From Octopus bimaculoides (Eukaryota), in assembly GCF_001194135.2 (NCBI RefSeq), contig NC_068984.1:104227187-104291186 (forward strand): a DNA stretch of 64,000 bases. Direction: 5' to 3'. Shown in pieces: positions 13,070 through 64,000 of this stretch. The translations under genes were made by a program, and so were the position numbers. How positions within the stretch are numbered: position 1 is the first letter of the stretch; each line of letters begins with the position of its first letter. A model generated the notes under the pieces. It was not told where the DNA came from, ran no database searches, and was given only the letters and a program-made list of their open reading frames with translations.

Positions 13070-15372
13070 AAAATTTTATTTTGTGCTTGGAAATTTCACC
13101 CAAGGAATTTTACTCTATTCATTTTAATATTTTTCTTTAATCTAGCTCTATTTAGAAGTTTTGCTTGAAGACAAATCAAACTGGCTGATAAAAACTAGAG
13201 AATGGCGGCAAAAATATGATGATTTAAAGAATAATGTAAGTTTTCAATGTTCTACACTCTCCTAATGGACAAAAATCTACAGATTTACACTTGTCACTTA
13301 TTTTATTTGAATTCTGTAATTCTCTGCTTATCTTTTTTAAGTCTATATTCATAACATATATTCCAATAATTCCCAGTCTTTGTTTCTCGTTTATCTTTGT
13401 TATTCCATGTTCCATACATGCAAACTGTGTTAAAGTTTTCCATTAATAAATGTCCTTCTACAAATATTAACTATACTGAATCACTGAAAAATTGTGGGGG
13501 TTTTTTTTATGCTTAAAGTATTTACCTTTCACTTCTGTATTAATAAAAAAGTACCAATCTAGTGGAGTGGATTGGTAGAACTATAAGAATATCAGACTGG
13601 CTGCCCTGTGGTATTTTTTCCAGTTCTTTGATTTCTAAGTTTAAATCCTACCAAGGTCTAACTGGGTGAGAGATTTAATCCATCATCTGGTTAATGCCAC
13701 CACCAGACATGTTGAGTGGAATTAGCAGAGTTCTCTCTGTTGCAAGTTGTTGGATTCAACGTTAGGTTTGAGCAGATCTTTGTCTGTCTTTCCAACTTGT
13801 CTCAGAGACCTGTAAAGGGTCATGCATGAGCCCTGCCTTCCCTCGGCTAAAAGATTAAAAAAAAATTCAGTGTATGCAATTGAAACAGCATTAAATTAAA
13901 ATAACCGTGTACTGTAGTTAATGTATTATTACTGGCACTCCGTCGCTTACGACGTCGAGGGTTCCAGTTGATCCGATCAACGGAACAGCCTGCTCATGAA
14001 ATTAACGTGCAAGTGGCTGAGCACTCCACAGACACGTGTACCCTTAACGTAGTTCTCGGGGATATTCAGCGTGACACGGTGTGACAAGGCTGGCCCTTTG
14101 AATTACAGGTACAACAGAAACAGGAAGTAAGAGTGAGAGAAAGTTGTGGTGGAAGAGTACAGCAGGGTTCGCCACCATCCCCTGCCGGAGCCTCATGGAG
14201 CTTTAAGTGTTTTCGCTCAATAAACAATCGCAACGTTCAGTCTGGGAATCGAAACTGCGATCCTATGACAGCGAGTCTGCTGCCCTAACCACTGGGCCAT
14301 TGCGCCTCCACAGTTAATGTATACATGCCAGTGAAAAGCAAGATGTCTTGCGAAGTCATATTGTGTTGGTCTTATTTATATATAATGGGGTGTATGTATT
14401 ATATTTCATCTTTATATAGATTAGTTGAACCAAAATATATGTAGATTACATTTGACATTTCAGTTGAAATTTAAGTTTACTTACCTGTTGAAATTGTGTA
14501 AAACTGGTTCTGAAGTTGAGATACCCTAAAAACCTTGTGACTGTCATGTACTAGTGAATGAGATATAAACTCGGTATATTTCAAGTAGGCATATCTATAT
14601 AGTCACTTTAATTTTTCTCTGAACCACCAATATAGAATGCAGGTGTATACCATAAACTCACATGGCCTGATATTAATGTTTGCACAGAATGAAGAAGACT
14701 CTGAAGCTAACAAGAGAACTACTCTTACACTAATGTCATAACAAACATACTTAACTGGTTCTTTGTTGGTGATGAATTGATTTACTTGAAACTTGGCGAA
14801 ATACAGTCTTGGATCAAAATACATTGGAGGATGCTGCATTGTAGTCTTAACTAATTAGTGATGATTTAGAGAATTGCATGTAAAATTAGTTTGATAATCA
14901 CTAAATGCTAATGTTTTCCTGATTTTGTTTTAATCTAAGGTATAATGTAAAGAAAACATTAATTTTTTCTTTCTTGAAGCTCATAATAAATCCACGCAAA
15001 GCTGTTGACTCTGCCCATGACCTGTCTTTGAACAATCCGCTGTCTCAGGCTGAAGAAGTAAGTTTCTTGTATTGTAAGCATCAAAATGTATGTATTGTAT
15101 ATCACATAAACATTCATATAAGACTAAAAATTAATGTGCTTTGGTATTTGTAGCTACTGAAAGTTAATAATCTTTGTTTTATCTTTCTTTTCAGTTTTAA
15201 TTTTTGTACTCACAGGCATGGCTGTGTGGTTGAGAAGTTTGCTTTTCAACCACTGGGTTTTGGGTTCAACCCCATTGTGTGGCACCTTTGGCAAGTGTCA
15301 CCTATTGTAGCTCCAGGCTAACCAAAGCCTTGTGAGTGGATTTGGTAGATAGAAACTGAAAGAAGCCCACTG

Positions 15373-16507: not shown

Positions 16508-18880
16508 CCACTTTTACGCTTGTCACTGTCATTTTTACTATTGTTTCTATCAGCACCATTTCAAATGTTATTCTATCTTTTCCAAGATGCTAGTGAGCAA
16601 TAGTGGTACACTATTTTAGATATAATAGCAATATACTCTAGTGGGTAGCATTTAAAGAGGTGAAGTAACTGTTTAGGGATAACGTATAGGAGCAACAAAA
16701 ATCTAAGAAAATCGAATTTTGTTTTGTATTTTGTGACTGTGACAATGAATATAATGACAAATGTTTTATGGAATGCAATGTATTGAAAATGAGGTAAATA
16801 TAGTATTAAGATGAGCTGAGGGTGCATAATTTAAGGTAAATAAGCATGATAATTGGTTAACATGGAAAATGTTTTGAGGAATATTCCACTTTCTTTAAAG
16901 AAAGCAAAAACAATATTCTACTCCCAGAAAAATTAGAGTTTTGAATTTAATTTGTTTGTATTTATAAAAGACCTGAATATTTTGAAATCAGTGTTCAGTT
17001 TTAATATTAGATGAAATAAAGAAAACGATTTATCAATTTTTATTTGAAAAATATGGCATTACTTAATCATTTCTGACCTTTCACTATTTTAGAGTCCCTG
17101 GAATCGGTTTTTTCAAGACAATGAATTGCGGCTTACCATCAAGCAAGATGTTATCCGAACGTAAGATATTTAACATTCTATTAAGAGAGATAATTTCGAT
17201 TTTGGTTGCTTTACGGTGTAAATAAACTGATTTTTTTTTTTTTGTGTGCTCCTGTTAAGGATTGTTCAGCTACAGTGGATGCTTAATATTAATGTACAGG
17301 CAGTATTGTTAGAACATTGGATAGAACTTGTTGGTTCAGACCCTGCTGAGGTTAGCCTTGCCTTTTGTCAGGGTTATCATCCCTCTGCTTAGAATCATTG
17401 CTCACTCTCCCTTCTGTTCTTCCTCATTTATAGGGACCACTTTAGGGTCTTATTATGAAGCAATGATCTTAAGAACTGGTGCCATGAAATTATGAAGCAA
17501 TGATCTTAAGAGCTGGTGCCATGAAAAAGCACCCAGTGTCCTCTGTAAAGTAGTTGGAGTTAGAAAGCTGTAGAAACCATGCCAAAATAGACGTTGGAAC
17601 ATGAGGTAGTCCTTCAGCTTATCAGACTCTGTCAAACTATCCTATCCATGCTAGCATGGAAGATGGATATTAAATAATAATGAGGATGATGCTAGTGTGA
17701 GATGGAATGCCTCATGTTATTTGTTCTAGTTCATATCCTGATGGTAATACTAGTGATAACATTGGAGCCAAACTGGGTTGGTCCTTGCCTTTGTCTGGAT
17801 AGCTGTTTGTCTGCCATACAACTTTGCCCAATCATGCACCATGAAGAGAGGCTGTCTAGATCCATTTCCCAGAATGAAATACTCAAAACACTGAAATTAT
17901 TGTTGGGATTTTAACAGGAAATAAGAATGTGTGTGTTTGTGTGTGATGGAGAGATAAGATATTTATGTCTACCAAAATAATTAATAAGAATAAAGTTAAA
18001 CAATTTGGTAATGTGCTGCATATATTAAAAAAAAGAAAAAGTTTCATATTTTCTAAGCCGTAATGTTTTGTTGGGGTCTGCATTGTATGCAAAAAGGCAA
18101 TTTGATGTTATAATGTGGGTGTTTGATGTATGGGAGCCTGCAGTTTCGTTATTCTCAGCTTAATGGGGCTGTGCAAGTGAGAGCCATATGGAGAGATTTT
18201 GGACTGACACTGTCTAATAGAAGTTGTAAGCCAGATTTTGTAAAGCTGATGTGCTGCGTATAGGCACACAGCTGGTTTGCAAATAGAGAAAGTAGCAAGA
18301 ACTAAATCCATATCAGGCTTACTAGAGAAACTGCTTGGAGAGATCTGATCTTCTCACAAAACAATGGCACCAAAATTAAGGTTATAAGGCCTTGTTATAG
18401 TCATGGTTGCAGTTCCTGGACAAGGAGTGTTTTGACAAGTATTTGGTAAGGTGTTTGTTGTCCAGTGACCATGAACAACACAATGTTTGTTGCTTTAGTC
18501 AATGTCCTATTTGAAGAGAAGGCGAATACAACTGTAGCATTTGGTTTACCCTATGCTTACTAATTTGTGCTTACTAATAGAAGTATTTCATCAAAGTGAG
18601 GATTCTGTATCTGGATAGCCAAACGTTTCTGGAAACAAAAACTCTGCACCACTGTCTTATACAGCAAGACATGTAAAAATGAATCTATGCACACTTAGCA
18701 GTTCAGTAATTTTTATCTTTTCATTGTGTTGATAAAACTGAAAAGCTGATATTCCTTGAAACATTGTCACTTATTTAAAATATTTTCTAAGCTGGTTGCT
18801 GCTGGCTAATTGATGTAGTTTTAACATACAAGTAAAGTAGTTTTGCTTTTAGCCCACTATCAGTATAGATTCAGCCTTAG

Positions 18881-18925
<45 letters not shown>

Positions 18926-21900
18926 NNNNNNNNNNNNNNNNNNNNNNNNNNNNNNNNNNNNNNNNNNNNNNNNNNNNNNNNNNNNNNNNNNNNNNNNNNN
19001 NNNNNNNNNNNNNNNNNNNNNNNNNNNNNNNNNNNNNNNNNNNNNNNNNNNNNNNNNNNNNNNNNNNNNNNNNNNNNNNNNNNNNNNNNNNNNNNNNNNN
19101 NNNNNNNNNNNNNNNNNNNNNNNNNNNNNNNNNNNNNNNNNNNNNNNNNNNNNNNNNNNNNNNNNNNNNNNNNNNNNNNNNNNNNNNNNNNNNNNNNNNN
19201 NNNNNNNNNNNNNNNNNNNNNNNNNNNNNNNNNNNNNNNNNNNNNNNNNNNNNNNNNNNNNNNNNNNNNNNNNNNNNNNNNNNNNNNNNNNNNNNNNNNN
19301 NNNNNNNAACTTTTCTACTGTGTCTTTAAAATCTATCTGATCTCAAAGGAAAGATCTTACTCATTTCATACTCATTATTTTAGTAAAATTATTTTCACTT
19401 TTAATTAGATCTATTATCATCATCAATTATTAATAATTTTTTAACCTTTCAAGAAAGAAAATATTTGTTTGTCTCAAAGACTATTAATGAAGAAAAACTT
19501 GTCTTTTAATTCTGTACAGTTCAGTACTCCTTCCTTTATTCCTTATTGAATCAAAGAAGATTGTCTGTATATAGTGCACTTCTGCTATTAATGAAAATGA
19601 ATATTTTGGCTCATTCATGTGATGATCGGTAGTTTTTGAATTCCAAACAAAGCAGGTAGTGAACATAAAATAAATACTTTTCGAATTTCTTTGAACTGTT
19701 AAAATGATAGATTAAGAAATATCTGAGAGAAAGTTAAATTTTATCTATTTATTTGATGATTATCAAGTAATTTTCGAAGAATGAAGTTAGGCACAAGGTA
19801 AGTTTTGTTTTTGTTCTCAAATAATTCAGTATAATCTTTTTAATTTTATATTCTGGAACATGCTTATTATACTTATATTATATTCTGGAACATGCTTATT
19901 GATTTAAGCTTAAAGCTTATATTGTCAATAAAGACATCCATTTCATCATTTTATAGTGTGCTTTAAATGCTTTGTTTTGTATTTTTTTTTTTTGTTTTTA
20001 AAGTTTTGATTTTTAATTCCATTGTATATTTTAACTGAATTCTAAGAAAAGCTTTTTCATTATTGAGCAATAATGTACAGTAATGAAATTATATATTGAA
20101 GAACATCTCTGATAATACTTTTTGTTTATCGACTATTTTTCTTCATAGTGTAACTTAATCATACTGATCTTCTATAATGTTCATTCGTTACTTTTAGGGA
20201 AGTTTGTTAAACTGTCCTCTTTGAAGTCAGACTAATTTTAATAATTCTAGAGCAGTTTTCTTTTGGTTTTAGATTAGCAAATTGTCTTTATATTTTTATT
20301 ATTTTTTTGTTTTAGTTACCATTTTGGTTTTTACAACTTTTGGTCAGACTCAGTACTAGCTCCCCAAACTCGTAAACATTTATATCTTCACTCATTTGTC
20401 ACCATTCTCATAGTTTCATACAATTGTGATTTTTGATGCATACCAATATTTCTTGGTGCATCTAACCTAATAATATACATTCAACAGTGAAGAAAAAATC
20501 TTCATGCAAATTATTTCCTTGAATCGCTTTTACATTTTTCCTTTTAAATGTGCTGTGTTTTTATTGAAAATTATGGTTGTTGGATGGTTTTGATCTTGTC
20601 TACTTCAAATGTTTGTTTTCAAGATAGACCAATTTTTAGAGTTAGTCCGTGTCATTATTTCCTTAGGATAGTCAGTTATATAACTTTGATACATCAATTC
20701 CTGCACTTGGATTGTTAGCTTCAAAATTTGATTTAGCTTTTAATTATTACAACTTAATTTTCAAACTACATTTATTTGTGTAAGACATGCTCCATAATTT
20801 GAGTCTCTTAAATTCGAGAGAACATTAAATTCAATTAGTGTGTAACAAGTGTATGTTACCTTCATTTCAAGTGTGACGTAGTATATTTTATTTTAGATGT
20901 ATGAAGTGGGGGAAATAAAACCAAAAGTAACTCAAAATGCTACACTTAATTTTAGATCATTTGTCAGGACAAAGGCTCTGTAAATTGAAAATATGTAAGT
21001 TGAGAATATTTCAATTGAGAGAAATTTATACACCTAAAATATAAAGGTATTATGAAGAAAATTTAATAGTTTATACTCTGGAGTCTACAGGCTACTATTT
21101 AAAAAGAAACAGTTTTTAATACTTTCTCACTACTCATACTAAATTCTGATTTGTAATAGGAATGATGTTCTATTTTACTTGCATAAAATATTTTGAACAA
21201 CATTGTTGAGTAAGTGATATATGCATTCTTTAATGTGAAATGCAACCTATTATGAAATTTTAGTGACTTGCTCTTTTGAGTTATAAAATTATTTAGAAGT
21301 TCTTCTTGCTAAGTTGAGAGGGGAACTTCCAAACTTAGGGACACAAAATAATAGCTGCTGTAGTAGTTGTAGTAGTGGGAATGATGATGTTTGCACTCAT
21401 GGGTCATGTAGCCAAGTAATCTAATAAACACCTCAACCACTGTGCATCTCAATATATCCAAAACACTCTGCATACGTTTAACCAACTCTTCCTTGAGTTT
21501 TGAAGGAAAACAAATCTAATTTGGTAGACCTTTGATTAAAAAAAAAAAAAAAATTTTATGGTTTCTTTTGAAATGAAAGAAATTTTGTTTTCGAGCAGTG
21601 ATATATATATATTTCAGTTTTATCAACCATCTTGTTGAGTGAGGATTTAAAAATATGAATCCTTTCTATGGTGCTCTAGCCTCTTCATTACATCATTGAC
21701 TTATGTCATTTTTTTTGCTTCTGTTCCAGTTATCCTCGAATAGAATTTTTTCAGTCTAATCAAGTGCGAAACATGATGGTTGATATTCTGTTTATTTATG
21801 CCAAGCTGAACGTTGACTTGTCCTATAGACAGGTTACTATTTCTTCATTTTTATTTCTCTTCTCTTCTCAAAGCTAAGTCTGCCATTCTTGTGTCTATTG

Positions 21901-24900
21901 CCATTGTAGCTAGCTGCACATTGTACAGCAGCATGTCTCCTATCAATGTTTAGTTTTTTGCATGCATATGTCCCTATCACTTTTCAGCATGGGGTGGTTA
22001 TACATCGAGGGAATTTACTTCAGATTTACTCTCAAATATCTTGAACATTGTCTAATATTTAACATTTCACTTAGAGTATAAATATTTAGAAAAAGGTATA
22101 TCTTAAAAGTGATAAAATTTGATAAACCTACTTCAAATTAAAAGTGAAAGTTTGATTGCAAAGTTTGAATAAACTTTGTGTAAAGATTATATATTATTAT
22201 TAGATATATCAGTAATAAATTACTGTTACATTTTATAGTTAACTAGTTTTGTTAAATATTAAACTAAAATTGTTGGGATTGTATCTTTGCAAACTGTGTA
22301 GTCATTTACCTTAAATTCTTATTAATGACAGTTAAATATATTAATTCATTTATAATAATAATAATTTTTGTTATTGTAGTTTAAGTTGTAGAATGTAAAT
22401 CATGATTTGTGACTAATGTTGACAAATAAATCTTTGTTTAGAGTTTTAGTCTATATTTTCTGCTTTTCCAATTTTAAGAAATTATTGTATGATATATAGT
22501 TAATAACTTATACAGAGTATATAGTTAATAACTTATACAGAGTAATCCCCTCTGAATTTGTTTCAAGGTATTTCATATATTTCCATGAAAATCTTATTTC
22601 CTCATTATAATTTGCTACTCAAAATATAATTTAGCTCTAAGGTTTTGTTGTTAAACCTTTACAAGAACATGCTGTCAACTTCTTTCACTATTTTGGATAA
22701 TGCTATCTGTTAATTATTAACACCCAGAGAAAAATCCTGATTAGCAACTTTTCCCTTTATAATTACTAGTCATGTTTGAGCCATTTTATATGGTATTTAA
22801 TATTAAAAGTAGTCATTTCCACATAAACATTATTTTTTTGAAACTTATTTTCTGCTCAATTACTGACCCAAACTACTTCCAATTAATGTAACTGATGAGG
22901 TTCTATGCATGTCATAGTTAATTCATTAAAAGTCTGCATTTCTGTAATAACTATGCATAAAGTTTTCTTTTTGTTTGCATATCTAAATATTTAAAAAGCT
23001 TTTATGTAAAACAAAATTATCTTCAACTCCTACTGAATATAAGTTGAAAAATAGACTTAGGATTATTTACTTGAAATAACCTCTAAAAGTTGTGGCTTTT
23101 CTTATGAAAGCATAGTCATTTTAAAAACATTTAAGAGAGCCTTGTTGTAATGTTAATATTATAACCACAAATTACATAATTAATTTTTAATATACTGGAA
23201 GATTGTGTGGGTAAGTGATTTCTGTTATAGCCTCAGGGTCAGTAAAAACTTGCAAATGAAACTGGGTAGATGGAAACTATAAAGAAATTTGTCAGATATG
23301 TGTTTGTGGGTGTGGGTTGAATAAAATCAGTGTGTCCAAGTAAAAAAAAGTCAAAATATAACCTTGCATCTCCTTATATCCAGTAAACCCTTTCTTCGTT
23401 ATGAGATAAGTATGAAGTTCACTATAAATGACTAAAAACCCTTGAAGCTGCTGCCTTAGCATGTACTTAACTGAAAACAACAAAAGAATAAAAGAACATA
23501 CTAAGATTTTGCTTCTTTCCTACCAACATAAGCTATGGACGTTTTATATACTGTTTGGATTTTAGTCCATTGTTTGTTTTTATATGCCATGCATATTTTG
23601 TATTGACTGCCCATCAGCATCTTCATTGTTATCAACTATTGATGAGGATCTTTCCAAATCATTCTTGTTCTTCTCTGGAAAATCCTTAGGTTTGTAGAAA
23701 AAAAATCCTGTGTTTTTTACGTGCCACCTACACAGGAATCAGTCCAGCGGCACTGGCAACAACCTCACTCAAATGCTTTTTCACATGCCACCGGCACAAG
23801 TGCCAATAAGGCAACACTGGTAATGAACATGGTCGAATGGTGCTTTTTATGTGCCACCGGCATAGAAGCAAGTCAGCTGCTCTGGCAGTGATCATGGTGC
23901 TCTTAACGTTCCACTGGCACGGATGCCAGTCATTGAATTTGCGAATTTGATTTGATGTCGATTTCACTTGCCTCAACAGGTCTTTGCAAGCAGAGTTTAG
24001 TGTCCAATGAAGGAAAGGTATGCATAAGTGGGCTGGTTACACCCCTGGCATAGGCCATGTGTTATGGTCTCATTTGGCTTGCACTCTTCTCATGCACAGC
24101 ATATTTCCAAAGGTCTCGGTCACTAATCATTGTCTCGGTGAGGCCTAATGTTCAAAGGTCATGCTTCACCACCTCATTCCAGGTCTTCCTCTTCCACAGG
24201 TTCCCTCAACTGCTAGAGTGTGGCACTTTTTACACAGCTATCCTCATCCATTCTCGCCACATGACCATACCAGCGCAGTCGTCTCTCTTGCACACCACAT
24301 CTGATGCTTCTTAGGTCCAACTTTTCTTTCAAGGTACTTACACTCTATCGAGTATGCACACTGACATTACACATCCATTGAAGCATACTGGCTTCATTCC
24401 TTGTGAGCTTATGCATGTCCTCAGCAATCACAGCCCATGTTTCACTGCCATGTAGCATGGCTGTTCGTACACATGTGTCACTGCCATGTAGCATGGCTGT
24501 TCGTACACGTGTCACACAGTCTGCCTTTTACTCTGAGCGAGAGGCCCTGTAACCAATATTTGCAGACTAAAGTAATTCTTATGAAATATTTTCATATTAG
24601 ATTATAATAAAAAAGACCATTTTATGGTTTATTTTTCTGTTGAGAGAAAAATAGATTTCATTGTTTAATATTTATTATGTAATCTCTGCTGAGGTTTACT
24701 TTGCCTTTCATCTTTTCAGGGTTAATGAATACTAGTTAATCGACTTACCTCCCCACAAACTTGCTGGTTTCTTGCCAGAATTTGAAACCAATATTTATTA
24801 TGTAATTTGATGTGATAAAGAATTGAAAATAGCAATTGCTGATCAAATGAGATTCTGGTTTGTTCTGCACAAATTCTGCTTTAAGTCTTAAAGAAACTTG

Positions 24901-27900
24901 GATTTTTGGCTCTGTCAAGAGACAGAACATTATATAATAGTACCTGTGGAAAGAAAATGAGAGTTTGATCTGACTAGTCTATGTTGCCATTTGTCTCAGC
25001 AATAATACCTGATAATGACTGCTAAAATTACAACTTAGATATTGTAGTTCATCTGTTAAAATGTTATGGCTTCTTGTAATAAATTGCAAAGAAGTAGTCT
25101 ATTTAGAATAATTGATTTATTAAATGACTATTGCTTGATTGGTGTATGACCTCTATGTTGCATAGCCTGCTAATACCCCAGTGAGAAAGAGAGTGTAGCT
25201 GTAAGATTGAAAAAGTGAAACCAATAATACTAAGTTTATAAACTTTAAATGATTGCAAATTTGTTAACAGCAAAAGATGTTAGTTTATTATTTCTGATTA
25301 TATTACTTGTGAGTATATTAGTGTTTGAATATTGATTAGAGCAAAGCTTTTTGCTTTCAGGATTTCTTTACTGCATATTTTACATATTTGTGTAATTGGA
25401 ATAGTTCCCTAACTACTAAAAGCAGCAGTGACTTGTGGTAGTCATCACCCTTCCTCATGATAATTATCATCAGTAACTATTTAACATCTATTTCCATGAT
25501 GCTGAGATGCAATATATGTTTGTATGTCATCTGCAAGTAATCCAGTGCATTTTTAACATCTTCAAGTGTAAAGTTGAATAAGTCTTCAGAATACTAAGCA
25601 GTCTTTTGGTATTTCTTCTGTTAACTCCAACTCAAAATTTTTTGGTGATTCTTGTTTCAATTTATTTCTTCATTTGGCAGAACTCTAATCTGAGATTTAA
25701 TTGCTGGTCACATTTATGTCTTAACCACTGATTATAATTTCATGCAACTGAAATCTTTTCCAGTGTCTATGAAAAGCACATCATTTGCTATTGTTAATAA
25801 TTAAAATAAAAAAGAAAAAGAAAATTGCTTTTCAGTGTTTCTAGATATTGAAATCCTCACCGATTCCATTTTAATAAATATATATTTCTTCTTTTTAGTG
25901 TTGTAATCTTCCATGTTGTTTGTTGTCATTTTTTCTTTTTTGTTTTTGTTGTAGCATGCCTTGAATATTGTGGACTTAGTCAAATTTCTACAACTGCCTC
26001 TTGTTGCTTCTGTTTTTGTTGGTGTCCAGGGATATGCTTTGTTTATTTTCTTTTCTTTTCCTTCTAGTTTTCCTGAGATTCCTTTCTTCCAATCAGACCA
26101 GGTTCATCAACTGATGGTTAATGTGTTGTTCTTATATTGTCGCAATGATCAGATGAAAACTCATTTGTCATACCGACAGGTTGGTTTCACTCCTCTTTAT
26201 ATGAGTTCATGATATCCTACAACAGGACGAGTGATGTTACATTCTTTCAGTAACATTTCTTTATCACTGTACTACTTAACTGGATTTTTACTAAAGAAAC
26301 ATTATTAAACAAAGATATTTTTATGTTTGTCTATTTGGCTCTCTCTCTCTCTCTCTCTCCCAAAATGAAATGAAAAAAAAAGCAACTCAAAGTAACCTGA
26401 GACACCCAGTGAACAGTTTATTTTCCAAGCATAATGTCATTTTGTTTTATTAATAATGGTTTACAGTAAAACCCTACAAAAATATCTTCTTTAGTAAACA
26501 ATATTGTAGCTTTAATTATGTTGTAAATATCACTGAAATTTGTCTAACGCTGGATATTGAGACAAATGGTTACAAGTACAAAAAATGTTTGTTTAAAAGA
26601 GAGAGAGAGCTGCATCTTCTAGAAAAATAGGCACAATTTTGTTTAATCTTTGTTTCTTGATTTTATTTCTGAACTTTCCAAAAAATTGTTTTTGAAACCA
26701 CGTTTAATGGGTAATATTTTATTGGGGCCATTTCAATACCCTTAACAGCAATAGGTATGTTTATAGATACAAACCCTTTCAAAATCCTAAATGTGATTTT
26801 GTACTGAATTCTTTAAACTAGCAAGTGAAATATATAAATGGAGTACTGTTATTTTATAATAAATTTATTTGGCAATGTGGAGTGATTTTTCTTATACTAC
26901 ATATTCCTATTTTCTGCAAGCATTATTGCTTAGCTTATTAAGTGATGGTCAGAATGATAATTAAATTATTGATATAATTAATTTCCTTAGCCTTTATAAT
27001 CATCACAAATTTATCACAGTGTGCTGAAGTAAATTTTTGTATATTAGAAAGAATAGCATTTAACATACATGCATGTTTTCTGTAAAACTACAAAACTCTA
27101 AGCAAAGCACCAATTATTTCTGAGGATTATGATGATTTTAGAAGTAAGTTCCGTCATGGATTGTAACCATTTAATCCTTTCCCCAATGCCCTTTCTAGTG
27201 TTTGTAGTTGGTTACTATGTTAAACTAACACAAGTGTGTGCACAATAACTTAAACCATTCTCAGCTATGAGACTAGTGGTGGTCTGCATTTGTAAAATTC
27301 TGTTCAGTAAAAACAAAAAATTTAAGTATGTTATAGTGCTGTGAGTTGAGGAACTGAGGTATGAAATATTTCTTTTCCTTACGGCACCCTAATATACTGT
27401 AGTTTTTTTCACTTTTTGCTGAATCCAGACTTGGTTTGGTACGTATATTATTTTCTTCAAATTCTCTTTTCAAAGATGATTAATCTACTAATCCTTAAAA
27501 GACCAATTGCCTATAAGACATTCTAATAATTTTTTTAAAAAAACAGTTTATTATGTCAATTATCTCCATCAACCCTATTGTACAAATATACGTAAATAAA
27601 ACTGAATGTTGGGTGGACTATTCACTAAAAATTTACTTTTTCTTCTTCTTTAAATTTACAATTTATAGCTGAGAGTGTCTAATTAATCTAATCATTAGCA
27701 AAATCTTTCTCTGTCCAGTTTCTTTGTGGAAAATGAAATATAGTTGTTTCTTGTACAAACATATATTAATTTCTAATATAGCTGTTTCTTGTACAAACAT
27801 ATGTTAATTTCATATACATATTGTAAAGAGAGTGACTTTGTGGTTTGATTCCTTAGTATGGAGCTAATGACTTGCATTTAAAGTGCAAGAGTAAGTACAA

Positions 27901-28699
27901 TAATACTGTGTAATTGGATAGGAGGTGATTGGTGGTAGTGGGAACTGAGTGTTGCCAATATTAATGAAAATCTTGAACGACTTGGACCCAATCCACAGCA
28001 TAGAAATAATGTAGTGTCCACAATAGATAGGGCCACTATGCTGGCCATCACAATACAGTCATATGACTCATCTGTCTTTATGAAATCACAAGAAACTAAT
28101 AAGGCATCCTCTTTGAAGCCTCCAGGAATTTACTCACATTTTAAAAGTAGGTAAAGAAAATTCTTGATTTTTATCTTCTGATTTAACATTCTACCTATTT
28201 TTTTTTAGTTTCTTTTCTAAAATCTTGTGATGACAAATTTTAGCTGATTAATATTCTAACCCTAACCCTCTCAAAATATCCATTTCACATTTGCTAATTT
28301 AAATGATACCTAAATAGTGTTCAGATTTTTTTCAGATCACACCCTTACTGTTAAAAGAAACCATTGAGTATTGAATAATGTAGTCCTAGATGGACATAGA
28401 TGGAATAATTTATAATTAAGTTTGTAGGATTGAGGTTGACTTGGGGCTAAAGAACAAAATGTAAAAATTATATTTCAAACAAAATGTAGCACTGCTACAA
28501 TGATTAACTAAATGTTTTGCTTCAATATTTTTAGAATTTTAGGAGTAAATGTATTCAATAATTTGTTTTCATGTCCTATTGTACATTGTACACTGTTGGT
28601 CACATGATAATATCTAAAAGCCCAAACTCATTCTTTAAGGTTCTTGTTTGAAAAGAGGTTTATAATATAATTTTATCTTTAATTCTTAAACTAGCATTA

Positions 28700-28735
<36 letters not shown>

Positions 28736-31700
28736 GAATACATTTTGTTTACATGATTTTGTTTGAAAAGTTTTAAGCTAAAGAGACAGCAGCAGCAGCA
28801 TGTGTTTAATTTTTGCTGTAGAATAATTTATAACTTGCTTGCATGGTCCTTATTTGGACATGTGCATGTTTTGGTTGGAATCATACTTAAAAGTAGTTAA
28901 ATGAAATTAATTAATTTTCTGACCTTGCTAGTCTGTTTTCTTAAAAAATTTTTTTTTGTAAATTTTGTGATGATAATTTTTAGCCAATATATTAAATACA
29001 TGAATTCAAAAATTTATGGATCAAAAATGTATTTAATAAACCATACCCAATTTTATGTTCTCAAATTTAAATGATATCAAAATAATGGGATACAAATAAA
29101 CATATTGAACTTAATTAAAAATCAAATCATTGTTGATTAGTGATTGTAATTTAATTTTTTTAACAGATAATTAATATTATAATGAACACTTTGCTTGCAT
29201 TGTAGAGTAATTGGCTGGGTAGAATGTTGTCATATGGCTTTTGTTTCATTCTGTCATCATTCAGATTACCTACAAACTATTGCTCAAGTTCCTTTGTTGT
29301 AAATGAAACTATAAGAAATTTATCATAGTAATGTTTTTACAGTGTCTTTAATTTAGATTGGGTTTATTTCTAAACCTGATTCAACTGAAATTTAAAGTGA
29401 AGATTTAATAGGAGTGGGTGTTTAGATCTCTTTATTGTATTGTTTCTCTCTTCAGTTTTAACATATAAAGTTTAGCCTTTAAATAATATACGACAAAGAG
29501 AAATAAATAAATTTGTATTTTTGAAGTTTGTGGTCTTGTCTGCCTGTTTCTCTAAATTTCAACTAATATAAAACTTTTAATATAATATTTGAATATAACC
29601 AAAGGGTATGTTAAATATTCTTTGTCATTCCCTTGTTTTTAGTATATTAATGTTTATACATCTACATGTTTTAATGTAGTCAATGAAATAGTTATAATGA
29701 AAGTACACTTACAGTTTGTATATATAGTGTTTTCTTGCTAGAAAATGTATTTGTGGCTTATGATGAATAAGTTTTCATCCGTTTTTCAAAGTGTGACAAC
29801 AATTTAAAAAACAAAACAAAACAAACTGAAGGCAACAAATATGTCTCTTGTGAAGTTTTCATCAGAACATCCCATGACTTTTTGATGACCTGGTCAGACA
29901 TTTAGTGTTTTTCCTTCCTGCATGTATTGTTGTAGTTATGTCACACTGTTTTTGATGCATGTGAGTTGTTTATCAAATTTATTCACATTTTGCATAGATA
30001 TGTTGCAGATTTATTATTATCATTATTATAAGTGTATGTTTTAAATTCCTATATCATTAAATAATCTATAAGGGATTAATGCCCTCTTTGTTGTGTTAAT
30101 GAATTAACTGTCTATTGAATGTAAGTATATGTGTCATATTTTGCCTGATGCTTTTCTTCTATCACTTTTTCAGAAAATAAATAAATAAATAAAATTTCTT
30201 TAAGTTTGTTAATGTGAACATACTGAAATGTATTTGGTGAAATAATTTATTTTATTACAGAATCACTTATTGTTTAGTGAAACAACTTAGTCATTAAACT
30301 AGTGTTTAGAATGTAAATTAACATGAAATTTTGACTCTAAAACAAGGAATTTGTATTATAGAACCTGGGGCAGCTTTGGGCAGGTTGGTATCAAATGGGT
30401 TTAATCAACTATTTCAAAATCTATGACTTATACTTTATTGGAGTAATGGGTGGGGGAATCAGTAGAGTGCCAGACAAAATGTGCTGCAAGTTATATCCCT
30501 TTACATTCTACTTTCAAACACCTAAAGTTCATTTTGACATTCCATCCTGCCTTCTGAGATTGATATGATATACCAGTCAAATTGCATAATCAATGAAATG
30601 AGGGAGTATATCCCTTATCAAAAATTTATGGCCTTTTGTCAATTTAAACTGATACAATATTTAGTTTTGATCGTTTTGGCTGAGTTCAAATGTCATTAGA
30701 AATTATTTCTGTTGTTTCTTCTCAAATCAGCAAATTAATGTTAATATATCATCATCAATTCAATTCTTTGTAAAACATCCAATAAAACCTAAATTTTTGT
30801 GCTCTAATGAAAATGTCATAAGCATTCTTAGTTTGAATTATTGCAGGTTAGAAGATGGAGAAAAAAACAAAGTAATCATTCAATGACTATTATTTTTAAT
30901 GGAATACATTAGTTGTATATTTCAATTAGTTTTGAATATATTCTGGAATTTTTGTGAAAAACTAATGTTTTTCATTATTAAGTTGTTAACAATGTGTTTT
31001 ACATAAAATTATGAGAGGCTTTAACTAGGAATGCTTAAAAATGAGAAGTTTTAGTATCAGAACTGAGGCTTGTATCAATGGGTGAGGCTACCAGAATCCA
31101 CCTCCAATTATACTGAAGTCACACAGTTGCACATACATAAGTATCCCTAGGCATTGTTCTACCCTTCTCTTCAGCTTCACTTCTTTCTTATTTTCTTTCC
31201 TTGTTGCAGGTTTTTTTTTTTTCACTTTCCCTTTATTCTCTCTCTCTCTCTCTCTTTTTTTTAGTTTAACACCTAACACTTTTGATGCTAACCTTTCTGA
31301 AACTCAACACCCCAAGTTCTATGTTAAAAATCTTCCTATGATCTAAGTTAAAACCTAAATTAAAACCTACCAACATATTTCATGTTAATTTATATTCCAA
31401 CTTGATAATGACAGTTATTTTATTAAATTTTTTGTTTTTTAATAAATTAATTGATAGATAGGCTGTGTATTTGAACAGAAATATTTTGACAAAAGCATTA
31501 AAATAAATTATTGAAATAAGTTATTAATGTGTTAAATAAAATTATATTTGGTACACTTTAAGTTATATTAATGAATTCTGTACAAAAGTGACTTTGACTT
31601 ACATTTTTACTATTGTCATTTTACTGTTTATAAAACAATTTTTGAATTTGTCTTGTTTCATTTGACAGTGGTTCACAAAAAAAAAAAAAAATTCTTTAAA

Positions 31701-34700
31701 TGCTAACACTGTAATGATAAAGGGATTTTAAAGAATTAAAAAAATTGTTTTTATTCAAACTAGGGAATACTAGTCTCATTGGTTATGGGTTTCCAATGTG
31801 CCAATCACTTATTCACTGCTTTTCTGATGGTGAAAATGACAAGGAAGTGCCTGTATCTTGATTCAGAACAAATATCCCAGAGGACGGTGTTCACAAAGCA
31901 CAATTTTATATCCTTCACTAAAATGCACAGATGCACTCAGTTGGCTTCTACACAGTTTCCATCCAAGACATTGGTTAACCCAAAGCTATAACAGAACATA
32001 CTTGCCCAAGGTACCATACTGTAGGATTGAACTCAGGGCCATATGGGTATGAAGCAAGCTTCTTAGCTGCACAGTTGTGTTGCTTGTTGTTGCAAACAAC
32101 TTATGTAATATATATAAATTGGATTCTATAAATTAGGTTAACTTTAATCTAATTATGCTAACATAATTAGCCTATGTTAATTATATATCAGTAATTAATG
32201 ATTATATACTTACAATCTTTATTTATAACATTTAAATACAAAGAAATAGGAAAAAAGAGGGATAAGAAAGGAAAAGAAAACAAGGTTAGGGTGTAAAGCA
32301 GCAGGGGAGAGGGTAATGGGCCACATACCCTAGAACAAATGGTGTGGTTAGTCATGGAGAATGGCTGGCGGCATTTGCTGCAGCAGCCATTCCACCTCAC
32401 AGGGCTCATTTCTTCAATGGGCCACTGTCATCCCTATTTTTCAGAGGAAACCCTATACTATGAGATCCACTATATCATATATTGAGGAGTAGAACAAATA
32501 CAAGATAACAAACTGGTTTAGTCAAGTTTTTGTTTTGTATGTTTGCGGGAAGAGTGAACTGGGAGAGGGATAACTGAAGAAGAAAAAATAGTCCTTCAGA
32601 TAAATGTTACTATTATAGTCTTCCAAACTCAAGATGTTTGATGTTTTATTAGGCTGTGTGACTTTTTTTTATATTATGATACTTTTGATTAGGTAAGAGA
32701 TGCTGCCTTAAATGTCTGAATTTATATTGAAGTATTTTTTCATATAATCAATCTGGTATAAAAAAAAAAAGGCAATGGGAATAAATTAATATGTAATCTA
32801 TTGCAGTTAATATTACATGTTTGATTCTAGAAATGTTTGTTAATTATACTTACCTGAATTATTGTAATGATGTTCTTGATTAGAAATATCTTACTTACCA
32901 AACATGCTTTCTTCAGGGTATGCACGAACTTTTAGCACCATTAATATTTGTACTACACTGTGATCATCAAGCATTCCTCCATGCGTGTGAAATAGAAAGT
33001 ATTGGGTAAGTAATTTTTTTGTTACTTTTAATTGGTTTTATTTTATTCAAATTACAATATGATAAGACCATCTTGTGGGTTTGCTTTCTGGATTATTATT
33101 GTTGCAGTTTGAGCTGGAGTGGCCAATAGCTTTAACTTAAATTGAAATAGGATTACCCTGTCTTTTCCAGGGTACTTAAGCAATTTGAAATAGTTGCCCT
33201 GTTTTGGATATTTTACAGACAACATTGATTATAATAATTGGAACCTTTAATGTAAAATCTTTCAGTGTAATTAACTAATTATACTAACTTCTCATGAATA
33301 CTTTGAAATGTCAAGTATTCCAATCAAATCAAATGTTATATTGTTGGATTTCCTTTATCCTAACATTATTATTACCTCCTTCTATTGTGTTCAAATCTCT
33401 TTTATGTTGCCTTTCTTTTGAAAGCTTGATTTATCTAACCCTTTAGCATTTAAACTGGCCATTTCTGGCCCAAAATGTTCTACCTGTTTTGTGGTCAAAG
33501 TGGTCAAATCTGGCCTCTTACACCTACCTGACAGTGTCATTCAAATCATATTTACATCATCAAAATCTCAAAGCTATGATTAATTCAAAACAATGTGAAT
33601 GAATAAGTATTACAATTGACAGAAACCTGAATGCTAAAGGGTTAAACATTCATTCTATAAAGTCATTGTTCTCATTCACTTCCTAAAACTTAACACAGGT
33701 ACTTTACTAGTGATGAAACATAATTTAATTTTGTTTCTTTTTAATAGTCATTAATCATTGCACTGTAAACTATTTGCTCAAATTTCCAGTTCAGTGTCTT
33801 GTAAATAGGGTAGAAGTAGTTTATAAACCTTACTCAAAGGAACTAAAGAGAAAATGTTGAGTTTTGAATTTCTTGGACTAAGGCACCAAAACCCTATTCA
33901 TTTAGATTTTTGTTTTTGACATTTCAATTTCTTAATTGTAAATTATAACTCAACAGTTGTTACAAGATTTATGTGATTCTTAGTGTTAAAAGTATATTTT
34001 TTCTTTTGTTGGTAAAGAATGTTTGAGAAAGTTGGTAACTGTATTGGATGACAGAATGTAAACTTATTTATTGCTTTTTATTGCTGATAATTTGTAGCTT
34101 GATTTTTTTTTTCTTCAGTTGCTTAATTTTTTTTTTTGTTTTTTTTTTTTTGTGATCGTTGTTTTAACATCTTTCAGCCTTACACAAATTACCGAGAGGT
34201 TAGCATTTTGATTCTAATTGCTTTCTTTCATTTATGCTGCTTTGCTGGTTCTGGACTTTAACAACATTTCTTGACAAAAACATGTTTTCCTATGATGAAT
34301 GTCTTTTCTGAAGAATTACCTGAATGCACTGGAATTAGTTACCAATTTTCTCTGAATTTTTTAATCTTATTGTTTATGTCAAAACTACTAGGAATTTTAG
34401 GTTTATTTTTTTTCTTTGCATGCCTATTTTTTCTTTACAAGTGCCTTGTTTTCCTTCCATTTCCTGGTAGACTCTTCAAACTATCTTTCATATATAAAAA
34501 CACTACAATATTCACATAAGCTTTTTTATATTTAGTTATTTTTTGGTTAACTTTTGTTTTTAAACCTTTACTTTAGAAATTACTTTTAAATATTTGAATA
34601 TTAATAACTTAGTAAATAATAATAATGCATTTGATTGAATACAAATTCTTAAAAATAAATTTATAAATAAAAGTAAACATTAATTTTCCTAAAATCTAGG

Positions 34701-63469: not shown

Positions 63470-64000
63470 ATGAACATATATACATACATGTACATATATA
63501 TGCATATATATATATATATATTTATTTATTTATTCATATACATATATATTTATTTATATATATATATATTTATTTATAAATGTATATATATTTATTTGTA
63601 TAGATATATATTTATTTATATTTATTTATTTATACATTTTTATTTATTTATTTNNNNNNNNNNNNNNNNNNNNNNNNNNNNNNNNNNNNNNNNNNNNNNN
63701 NNNNNNNNNNNNNNNNNNNNNNNNNNNNNNNNNNNNNNNNNNNNNNNNNNNNNACTAGTCTAATCTTAAGTACTCTGTCACATACTCTAACTACCTCGAT
63801 TATATTTATTTATTTATATATGTATTTTCTTTATTTATTTATATATATGTTTATTTATGTATATATATATATTTATTTATTTATATATATTTATTTTTAT
63901 ATATATATATTTATTTATTTTTATGTATATATATTTATTTATATATATATTTATTTATTCATATATATTTATTTATTTATTTATTTATTTATATATATTT
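63470..64000. repeat. AT-only low-complexity simple repeat with a 100-N gap (63654-63753)
   Basis: (TATATATTTATT)-like units seen directly. Confidence 0.95.

What the first reader, a model, noticed from the sequence alone, without database searches (positions are those of the whole stretch)
21730..26179. Tandemly duplicated, probably mutually exclusive exons in the catalytic TBC domain of TBC1D5
Seen in sequence: two intact homologous exons, A (YPRIEFFQSNQVRNMMVDILFIYAKLNVDLSYRQ) and B (FPEIPFFQSDQVHQLMVNVLFLYCRNDQMKTHLSYRQ). Both have good splice sites and phase 2-0, and both end in the YRQ glutamine-finger codon. Including both or skipping both breaks the frame. The copies differ at many residues and by a 3-aa insertion yet have no stops, which suggests selection on both. 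Established: the segment lies between the Arg finger (DxxR) and the Gln finger of TBC Rab-GAPs, and TBC1D5 is the retromer-associated Rab7 GAP. Inference: two catalytic-core isoforms, possibly differing in Rab specificity or GAP rate and possibly tissue-specific. I know of no report of such a switch in TBC1D5 but cannot check the literature.
Basis: partly seen in the sequence, partly recalled or inferred. Interest (0 to 1): 0.88.

Follow-up and report, generated by a model that had tools for sequence, protein, structure and literature searches.

The report
Alternative catalytic-core exons in octopus TBC1D5
The octopus gene for the retromer-linked Rab-GAP TBC1D5 carries two duplicated exons, used one at a time, that each encode the stretch between its two catalytic fingers; the pair is real, is used differently between samples, and is shared by molluscs, annelids and a nemertean, but both isoforms are already in public gene annotation.

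Summary
Exon A (21730-21832, 103 nt) and exon B (26068-26179, 112 nt) are homologous, have AG/GT borders and are both 3n+1 in length.

Public RNA assemblies join each exon to the same upstream exon (ends 17160) and the same downstream exon (starts 32917). Samples range from A-only through mixed to B-only. Including both exons, or neither, gives an early stop codon.

The window is Octopus bimaculoides TBC1D5. Both isoforms are already in RefSeq and UniProt for three Octopus species. I found no paper that describes the switch.

New here:
- The pair is ancient. The same order (upstream exon, A, B, downstream exon) and the same phases occur in oyster, a nemertean and two annelids. In the two annelid gene models I looked up, the A exon is not part of the annotated product. 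Amphioxus has only a B-type segment.
- A-type exons are far more conserved than B-type exons (82% versus 52% mean identity).
- The two types differ by a fixed charge reversal two residues after the Arg-finger Arg-Thr.
- A 30-nt micro-exon can insert ten residues just before exon A.

Any functional difference between the isoforms is untested. This is a solid new example of a known kind of splicing.

The parts
14980..15057 (+). Constitutive exon encoding LIINPRKAVDSAHDLSLNNPLSQAEE. It holds the conserved NNPLSQ motif of the VPS29-binding Ins1 peptide.
   Evidence: Gene model. Its junction to 17093 is seen in RNA: the loose letters are ..AATCCGCTGTCTCAGGCTGAAGAA. The segment aligns to PDB 5GTU chain B, the TBC1D5 Ins1 peptide, with E = 2.7e-6.
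17093..17160 (+). Constitutive upstream exon encoding SPWNRFFQDNELRLTIKQDVIR plus AC. It carries the Arg-finger motif IxxDxxR and has a strong donor, GTAAGA.
   Evidence: The RNA contig ends exactly at 17160, where the assembly graph branches.
19768..19797 (+). 30-nt cassette micro-exon (T-NFRRMKLGT-S) that inserts 10 residues directly after DVIRT. It has an AG acceptor and a GTAAGT donor.
   Evidence: Found by translating the intron. A 187-nt RNA contig in run X8 reads upstream exon, micro-exon, exon A at depth 9.1. It is present in RefSeq O. bimaculoides X1/X2/X8 and O. sinensis X2/X3/X8/X9, always together with exon A.
21730..21832 (+). Alternative exon A (103 nt, 34 codons plus 1 nt). This is the A-type copy, highly conserved across lophotrochozoans. 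It ends in the Gln finger YRQ and has a weak donor, GTTACT.
26068..26179 (+). Alternative exon B (112 nt, 37 codons plus 1 nt). This is the B-type copy, resembling the single exon of deuterostomes and arthropods, with a 3-residue insertion found in Octopus. It ends in YRQ and has a weak donor, GTTGGT.
32917..33005 (+). Constitutive downstream exon encoding GMHELLAPLIFVLHCDHQAFLHACEIESI plus GG.
   Evidence: The loose letters GTATGCACGAAC.. follow both exon A and exon B.

Best explanation
Exons A and B are an ancient tandem duplicate of the TBC1D5 exon that encodes everything from the residue after the Arg-finger Arg-Thr up to and including the Gln finger. They are spliced in a mutually exclusive way, giving two versions of the catalytic core. 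A third version carries a 10-residue micro-exon insert in front of A.

Shown:
- Each exon is joined to the same two neighbouring exons.
- A and B depths together roughly equal the depth of the shared upstream exon.
- The ratio differs strongly between samples.
- The same upstream-A-B-downstream layout, with the same phases, exists in oyster, a nemertean and two annelids, but not in amphioxus.
- A-type copies are much more conserved than B-type copies.

Inferred:
- Exclusivity is policed by reading frame. Both exons are 3n+1, so double inclusion or double skipping gives an early stop and the transcript should be removed by nonsense-mediated decay.
- The weak 5' splice sites of both exons make the choice dependent on cell-type splicing factors.
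- The two cores differ in GAP properties. The fixed differences are Tyr-Pro-Arg/Lys versus Phe-Pro-Glu just after the Arg finger, and Asn/Thr/Ser versus mostly Glu/Asp at position 14 (Ala, Gln or Gly in four of 18 species).
For: Splicing:
- Searches show both exons bounded exactly at their AG/GT sites in RNA contigs. The 28-30 letters upstream are identical (..GATGTTATCCGAAC) and so are those downstream (GTATGCACGAAC..). The contigs form the short two-branch 'bubble' that a k=31 assembler makes at an alternative exon.
- Contig depths, A/B: X1 16.1/31.6; X2 11.5/11.2; X3 28.2/no spliced B seen; X11 22.6/36.7; X7 29.1/21.8; X5 16.5/0 (within a 3436-nt contig); X25 0/41.4 (3338-nt contig); X26 0/6.2; X27 0/15.3; X28 0/19.6.
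- the upstream exon has depth 37.9 in X1 and 46.3 in X7, close to A+B in those runs.
- no 21832>26068 joint in four runs.
- the early stop codons for A+B and for skipping both.

Conservation:
- both forms are annotated in O. bimaculoides, O. sinensis and O. vulgaris. Another cephalopod's transcripts carry an A form and a 35-residue B form.
- both types are annotated as isoforms in two Haliotis species, Mercenaria, Mytilus, Ostrea, Saccostrea, Crassostrea and Lineus. The one Lingula isoform recovered is A-type.
- the genomic layout and phases are conserved in Magallana, Lineus, Lamellibrachia and Capitella, and all alternative exons there are 103 nt.
- A-to-A identity averages 82% and B-to-B 52%. 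A is the more conserved in 66 of 66 species pairs. A versus B within a species averages 44%.
- the residue sets of A-type and B-type do not overlap at positions 1, 3 and 14.
- alternative-exon donors match 1-3 of 4 consensus positions, against 3-4 of 4 for the upstream exon.
Against: - The RNA data are assembler contigs, which drop rare variants. Low-level A+B or skipped transcripts cannot be excluded or measured, and depth is only a rough proxy for expression.
- Run metadata are coded, so 'tissue-specific' is really 'sample-specific'.
- Nothing here tests nonsense-mediated decay, splicing factors or enzyme activity.
- The AlphaFold model was poor over this segment (pLDDT below 50), so there is no structural support for a Rab-facing position of the residues that differ.
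- No convincing competing RNA structure was found. The inverted repeats are at chance level.
Confidence: 0.9

Rival explanations
1. The two exons are interchangeable in protein function. The duplicate persists only because each copy has become tied to a different splicing or expression context (regulatory subfunctionalisation), or by neutral drift of usage.
For: Both copies keep every TBC-defining residue: P2, F6, L20, F21, Y32 and Q34 are invariant in both sets. Both score above the Pfam threshold. No functional assay exists.
Against: The A and B types have kept non-overlapping residue sets at positions 1, 3 and 14 across four phyla. The copies evolve at very different rates (82% versus 52% identity, 66 of 66 pairs). 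Neither is expected for interchangeable copies. Samples switch completely between A and B.
Confidence: 0.15
2. One copy is a decaying duplicate, or a 'poison' exon whose inclusion only serves to down-regulate the gene.
For: Weak donors on both exons. B is the less conserved copy and carries a lineage-specific indel.
Against: Each exon alone gives an open reading frame through the rest of the model, with no stop. Each is the only form in multi-kilobase mRNA contigs of some samples (X5 for A; X25, X27, X28 for B). Both are intact with the same phase in five genomes from three phyla. pN between A and B is 0.27 while pS is saturated.
Confidence: 0.02
3. An assembly artefact or two paralogous genes, rather than two exons of one gene.
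For: The scaffold has an N gap at 18926-19307, in the intron upstream of exon A.
Against: A and B differ at 39% of aligned nucleotides, so they are not haplotype copies. Both are spliced to the same flanking exons. The same layout occurs in independent chromosome-level assemblies of other phyla.
Confidence: 0.01

Closest known systems
Mutually exclusive exon pairs that arose by tandem exon duplication. From my own knowledge: SNAP25 exons 5a/5b and RAB6A/RAB6A' in membrane traffic. The class is discussed in PMC8373072, of which I saw only the abstract.
   Same: Adjacent homologous exons of nearly equal length and identical phase. One is used per transcript. Each replaces a compact functional segment, and both are conserved over long evolutionary times.
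   Different: Here the swapped segment is the core between the two catalytic fingers of a Rab-GAP. The pair is restricted, as far as sampled, to lophotrochozoans. The means of exclusion is only inferred (reading frame plus weak donors).
Vertebrate and amphioxus TBC1D5, the retromer-associated Rab7 GAP, which has a single form of this segment
   Same: Same gene family. The VPS29-binding NNPLSQ peptide, the Arg finger and the Gln finger are all conserved. Octopus exon B resembles the deuterostome segment (FPEI.FF...LF.Y.R).
   Different: Amphioxus has no A-type exon, and its B-type segment is split by an extra intron. All deuterostome and arthropod proteins seen carry only the B-type.
TBC1D5-like proteins of fungi (Mucoromycota) and Amoebozoa
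   Same: The C-terminal half of exon A (DILFIYAKLNxDxSYRQ) is close to their DILFIYCKLNxDVSYRQ and RILFIYARQNPKLSYKQ.
   Different: Their N-terminal half is FPD or YPE, not YPR/K. With only 34 residues, one cannot tell which copy is the 'original'.

Membership tests
RabGAP-TBC domain (Pfam PF00566) | Profile match above the curated threshold | tested here: met
   Segment with A: 54.6 bits. Segment with B: 45.3 bits. Cut-off: 25.2 bits.
RabGAP-TBC domain (Pfam PF00566) | Dual catalytic fingers: IxxDxxR (Arg) and YxQ (Gln) | tested here: met
   IKQDVIR lies in exon 17093-17160. YRQ ends both exon A and exon B. R, Y and Q are invariant in the 34-sequence alignment.
RabGAP-TBC domain (Pfam PF00566) | GTPase-activating activity on a Rab | not testable with these tools
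   Needs a biochemical assay.
TBC1D5 orthologue | Closest named relatives are TBC1D5, over the full length | tested here: met
   A 604-residue model from the window is 91-95% identical to Octopus 'TBC1 domain family member 5' and 44-65% identical to mollusc through mammal TBC1D5.
TBC1D5 orthologue | VPS29-binding Ins1 peptide with the Pro-Leu motif. Leu142 of human TBC1D5 inserts into the VPS29 pocket (PMC5691146). | tested here: met
   HDLSLNNPLSQAEESPWNRFFQDNE aligns to 5GTU chain B, QDLMINNPLSQDEGSLWNKFFQDKE, with E = 2.7e-6. That the Leu of NNPL is Leu142 is my own count, not checked.
TBC1D5 orthologue | Retromer binding and Rab7 GAP activity | not testable with these tools
   Inferred from orthology only.
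Mutually exclusive exons from tandem exon duplication | Adjacent homologous exons with the same phase and similar length | tested here: met
Mutually exclusive exons from tandem exon duplication | Each exon spliced to the same upstream and downstream exon in separate transcripts | tested here: met
   Long single-isoform contigs appear.
Mutually exclusive exons from tandem exon duplication | Transcripts with both exons or neither are absent or non-productive | tested here: inconclusive
   They are non-productive by reading frame. No A>B joint appears in contigs, and A+B depth roughly equals the upstream-exon depth. But contigs cannot exclude rare forms, and no raw-read runs were available.
Mutually exclusive exons from tandem exon duplication | Both copies kept in related species | tested here: met
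Mutually exclusive exons from tandem exon duplication | A defined mechanism of exclusion (competing RNA pairing, steric block, incompatible spliceosomes, or nonsense-mediated decay) | not tested
   Steric block is unlikely, because the A-B intron is 541-4235 nt. All sites are GT-AG. RNA pairing candidates are at chance level. Nonsense-mediated decay is inferred from the reading frame only.

The most novel reading that the evidence does not exclude
Lophotrochozoans (molluscs, annelids, nemerteans, brachiopods) have kept, since before these phyla diverged, a regulated switch between two catalytic cores of the retromer Rab-GAP TBC1D5. One is an ultra-conserved A core with a charge reversal next to the Arg finger, optionally extended by a 10-residue micro-exon. 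The other is a fast-evolving B core. On this reading the cores differ in Rab substrate, catalytic rate or regulation, giving cell-type-specific control of Rab7 and retromer that deuterostomes lack or achieve by other means.
Probability: 0.4. Interest if true: 0.6.

Novelty: new member of a known kind. Interest (0 to 1): 0.45.

Why it matters
Alternative splicing rarely replaces the active-site core of an enzyme. Where it does, the two forms usually differ in function. Here the swapped piece runs from just after one catalytic finger of a Rab-GAP through the other finger. It sits directly after the retromer (VPS29) docking peptide, and both versions have been kept in at least three animal phyla at the genome level.

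This gives a natural experiment for how the segment between the fingers tunes TBC-domain activity or Rab choice. It also points to a layer of endosomal regulation specific to molluscs, annelids and their relatives.

There is a practical point too. In the two annelid gene models I looked up, the A exon is not part of the product, and the gene models recovered for several other species show only one of the two exon types, so comparative studies of TBC1D5 may be mixing non-equivalent isoforms.

Tried and rejected
I used short stretches and read the partner exons from the loose ends instead.
- Look-ups for Lingula, Owenia and the Haliotis X4 isoform were not on record.
- The prawn gene was too long to return DNA, so ecdysozoan genomes were not checked.

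Searches that misled at first:
- Short protein queries returned only fragments of up to about 155 residues, because targets appear to be limited to roughly 1.75 times the query length. No B-type hit appeared until I used a 604-residue model.
- I first took locus L001 (SRR11004885) for another cephalopod. Its A-type exon is just as close to bivalve sequences, so its origin is unknown and I withdraw that reading.

Analyses that gave no usable result:
- The AlphaFold2 model of the B isoform has mean pLDDT 50, and below 50 across residues 170-247. I did not use it for structural claims and ran no fold search. Its only hint is that the Octopus 3-residue insert falls in a non-helical stretch before YRQ.
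- Rfam found nothing in 17000-33200.
- Inverted repeats: one pairing between A's 5' splice site (21830-21862) and 26367-26399, and one 16-nt local stem (21621-21636 with 21770-21785). Both are of a size expected by chance or only marginally above it, and no cross-species data were available.
- Literature searches for TBC1D5 or 'TBC domain' together with mutually exclusive exons or tandem exon duplication found nothing relevant.
Full report
**What is in the sequence**

Exon A (21730-21832) reads YPRIEFFQSNQVRNMMVDILFIYAKLNVDLSYRQ. Exon B (26068-26179) reads FPEIPFFQSDQVHQLMVNVLFLYCRNDQMKTHLSYRQ.

Each follows a pyrimidine tract and an AG. Each begins with a T that completes the Thr codon started by AC at the end of the upstream exon (17093-17160..IKQDVIRT). 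Each ends on the Gln codon of YRQ and is followed by GT. The downstream exon (32917-33005) starts GMHELLAP.

The lengths are 103 and 112 nt, both 3n+1. Joining A and B puts a stop three codons into B. Skipping both puts a stop six codons into the downstream exon.

The two peptides align at 18/37 identities with E = 1e-12. TBC1D5 fragments from other organisms find only these two copies in the 64-kb window. Between A and B the synonymous sites are saturated (pS 0.89) while pN is 0.27, so the duplication is old and both copies have been under selection.

The donors are weak: GTTACT and GTTGGT, against GTAAGA on the upstream exon.

**Which gene and which organism**

Homologue-guided exon finding gives a plus-strand gene that fills most of the window. 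I traced coding exons from about 3840 to beyond 58250.

A 604-residue model built from those exons matches 'TBC1 domain family member 5' of Octopus sinensis (95%), Argonauta hians (92%) and O. bimaculoides (91%), and TBC1D5 of other molluscs and of vertebrates at 44-65%. Where O. bimaculoides and O. sinensis differ (KRATRHEQDISTK versus KRTTRHEQDINTK), the window agrees with O. bimaculoides.

Both versions of the segment pass the Pfam RabGAP-TBC threshold (54.6 and 45.3 bits against a cut-off of 25.2). The exon at 14980-15057, together with the start of the next exon, encodes HDLSLNNPLSQAEESPWNRFFQDNE. This aligns to the TBC1D5 Ins1 peptide crystallised with VPS29 (5GTU chain B, E = 2.7e-6). 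That peptide's Leu142 fills the VPS29 pocket (PMC5691146). The alternative exon therefore lies directly after the retromer-docking peptide and the Arg finger, and it supplies the Gln finger.

**RNA evidence**

Public RNA assemblies hold both exons. When short stretches around each exon are laid against these assemblies, the contigs match from 21730 to 21832, or from 26068 to 26179, and no further. On both exons the unmatched letters are the same..TTACCATCAAGCAAGATGTTATCCGAAC before, which is the end of the exon at 17160, and GTATGCACGAACTTTTAGCACCAT after, which is the start of the exon at 32917.

In several runs A and B appear as 156-nt and 165-nt (or 141-nt) contigs that share about 30 letters at each end. 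That is what a k=31 assembler produces at an alternative-exon bubble.

Contig depths by run:

| Run | Exon A | Exon B | Note |
|---|---|---|---|
| X1 | 16.1 | 31.6 | |
| X2 | 11.5 | 11.2 | |
| X3 | 28.2 | no spliced B seen | |
| X11 | 22.6 | 36.7 | |
| X7 | 29.1 | 21.8 | |
| X5 | 16.5 | 0 | inside a 3436-nt mRNA contig |
| X25 | 0 | 41.4 | 3338-nt contig |
| X26 | 0 | 6.2 | |
| X27 | 0 | 15.3 | 2397-nt contig |
| X28 | 0 | 19.6 | |

Six of the runs belong to one study of one organism, so the choice is sample-dependent.

The shared upstream exon has depth 37.9 in X1 and 46.3 in X7, close to A+B in those runs. No 21832>26068 joint appears in four runs.

Caveats: these are contigs, which lose rare forms and give only rough depths. 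The run labels are coded, so I cannot name tissues.

**Already annotated**

Both forms are in public protein sets:

| Species | B form | A form | Micro-exon + A |
|---|---|---|---|
| O. bimaculoides (UniProt) | A0A0L8FYN8, A0A0L8FXS2 | A0A0L8FY05, A0A0L8FXL3, A0A0L8FXM0 | |
| O. bimaculoides (RefSeq) | X4 | | X1, X2, X8 |
| O. sinensis (RefSeq) | X6 | X5, X7 | X2, X3, X8, X9 |
| O. vulgaris | CAI9721307 | CAI9721302 | |

Transcripts of another, unnamed cephalopod carry an A form with one substitution and a B form of 35 residues (FPEIPFFQSDVIHLLMINVLFIYSRNDQTHLSYRQ). The length of B therefore varies within cephalopods but stays 3n+1.

Full-text searches found no paper that describes or interprets this switch.

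**How old the pair is**

Extracting the inter-finger segment from about 100 annotated TBC1D5 proteins shows two sharply separate types:
- A-type: YP[RK]IEFFQSNQ.RN.MVDILFI[YF]AK.N..SYRQ.
- B-type: FPE[ILV].FF......M...LF......SY[KR]Q.

Both are annotated as isoforms of one gene in two Haliotis species, Mercenaria, Mytilus, Ostrea, Saccostrea, Crassostrea and the nemertean Lineus. The one isoform recovered from the brachiopod Lingula is A-type.

I fetched genomic loci and located the exons. Magallana gigas, Lineus longissimus, Lamellibrachia satsuma and Capitella teleta all have the order upstream exon, A, B, downstream exon. Both alternative exons are 103 nt, with AG/GT borders and the same phases. 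In the two annelids the A-type exon is intact but is not part of the annotated product I looked up.

Branchiostoma floridae has only a B-type segment, split by an extra intron, with no room for an A exon. All deuterostome, cockroach and prawn proteins seen are B-type. Arthropod genomes could not be inspected.

The pair therefore predates the split of molluscs, annelids and nemerteans. It is absent from the one deuterostome genome I checked.

**How the two copies evolve**

Across 12 species with both copies:
- A-to-A identity averages 82% (minimum 62%).
- B-to-B identity averages 52% (minimum 38%).
- A is the more conserved copy in all 66 species pairs.
- A versus B within a species averages 44%.

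Column by column, the two types have non-overlapping residue sets at three positions:
- Position 1: Tyr/His in A, Phe in B.
- Position 3: Arg/Lys in A, Glu in B. This is a charge reversal two residues after the Arg-finger Arg-Thr.
- Position 14: Asn/Thr/Ser in A; mostly Glu/Asp in B.

Positions 22, 24 and 25 also differ in their commonest residue: Ile/Ala/Lys in A against Cys/Cys/Arg in B.

The C-terminal half of A resembles Mucoromycota and amoebozoan TBC1D5-like proteins. B resembles the deuterostome and arthropod segment. Which copy is the original cannot be decided from 34 residues.

**Mechanism (inferred)**

- In all five genomes both alternative exons are 3n+1. The frame therefore allows exactly one of them, and transcripts with both or neither should be removed by nonsense-mediated decay.
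- Nine of the ten alternative-exon donors in the five genomes match at most 2 of the 4 consensus positions +3 to +6, and the tenth matches 3. The upstream constitutive donors match 3-4. This fits a choice that depends on splicing factors.
- Steric exclusion is unlikely, because the A-B intron is 541-4235 nt.
- All sites are GT-AG.
- The inverted repeats I found are not beyond chance.

A biochemical difference between the isoforms is plausible from the fixed charge differences, but it is untested. The structure model was too poor to help.

**A third form**

A 30-nt micro-exon (19768-19797, with AG and GTAAGT borders) inserts NFRRMKLGTS between DVIRT and exon A. A 187-nt RNA contig in run X8 reads upstream exon, micro-exon, exon A. 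In the RefSeq isoforms listed it always accompanies A. Two panpulmonate snails have a 10-residue insert (TFGKH.WK.C) at the same site, one with an A-type and one with a B-type exon.

**Verdict**

The observation and the main interpretation are correct. This is a well-supported, deeply conserved pair of mutually exclusive exons in the catalytic core of TBC1D5. It is a new, undescribed example of a well-known kind of splicing, and it is already present in automated annotation. Its depth in evolution, the unequal conservation of the two copies and the fixed charge differences next to the Arg finger make it a reasonable target for experiments. No functional claim can be made yet.

Noticed in passing
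window 19768-19797 (+): A 30-nt cassette micro-exon inserts NFRRMKLGTS directly after the Arg-finger motif DVIRT. It is spliced upstream-exon, micro-exon, exon A in run X8. In the RefSeq isoforms listed it occurs only together with exon A. Physella and Biomphalaria TBC1D5 have a 10-residue insert (TFGKH.WK.C) at the same site.
   Followed up: partly
window 34178-34198 (+): A 21-nt micro-exon (adds LTQITES between ..IESIG and EMIREL) with CAG and GTTAGC borders. It is present in some O. bimaculoides, O. sinensis and O. vulgaris isoforms, combined with either A or B. I did not check it in RNA.
   Followed up: partly
window 50214 or 50238 to 50390 (+): A cassette exon (..NKSRSSVMTGFSSLTRKINNRPRTLSVRNSPKKMTKSSSEPMNLQTDISP) is skipped in the O. 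bimaculoides UniProt models and in RefSeq X8, and included in the other RefSeq isoforms listed. There are two candidate acceptors; RefSeq uses 50214.
   Followed up: no
L005 9705-9806 (Lamellibrachia satsuma); L006 3466-3567 (Capitella teleta): Intact A-type exons (YPRIQFFRTEPVRTLMVDTLFIYAKLYPHLSYRQ and YPRIEFYHTDTIRSFMVNILFVYAKLKPEIEYRQ) with AG/GT borders lie upstream of the annotated B-type exon. They are not part of the annotated products I looked up.
   Followed up: yes
window 23600-24800 (intron between A and B): An interspersed repeat whose copies are very abundant in RNA assemblies (contig depth up to about 4500 in several runs, with many variant contigs). It has no Rfam match and no long ORF. 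It is probably a transcribed SINE-like or other transposon family.
   Followed up: partly
window 18884-19307, 324-609 and 63654-63753: Assembly gaps (runs of N). The one at 18926-19307 follows a (TA)20 tract in the intron upstream of exon A. A (GT)15 tract lies at 28702-28731.
   Followed up: partly
window 21621-21636 with 21770-21785; 21830-21862 with 26367-26399: A 16-nt (15/16) inverted repeat pairs the intron about 100 nt upstream of exon A with the inside of exon A. A second pairing (10 nt perfect, 33 nt at 73%) links the 5' splice site of exon A with a site about 190 nt downstream of exon B. Both are at or near chance level, and conservation was not tested.
   Followed up: no
window 32928: Contigs of coded organism C read G where the window has A (GAA to GAG, synonymous Glu in GMHELL). 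The same organism shows no difference in the 215 nt of exons A and B. This could be a species difference or A-to-I editing; the two cannot be told apart here.
   Followed up: no
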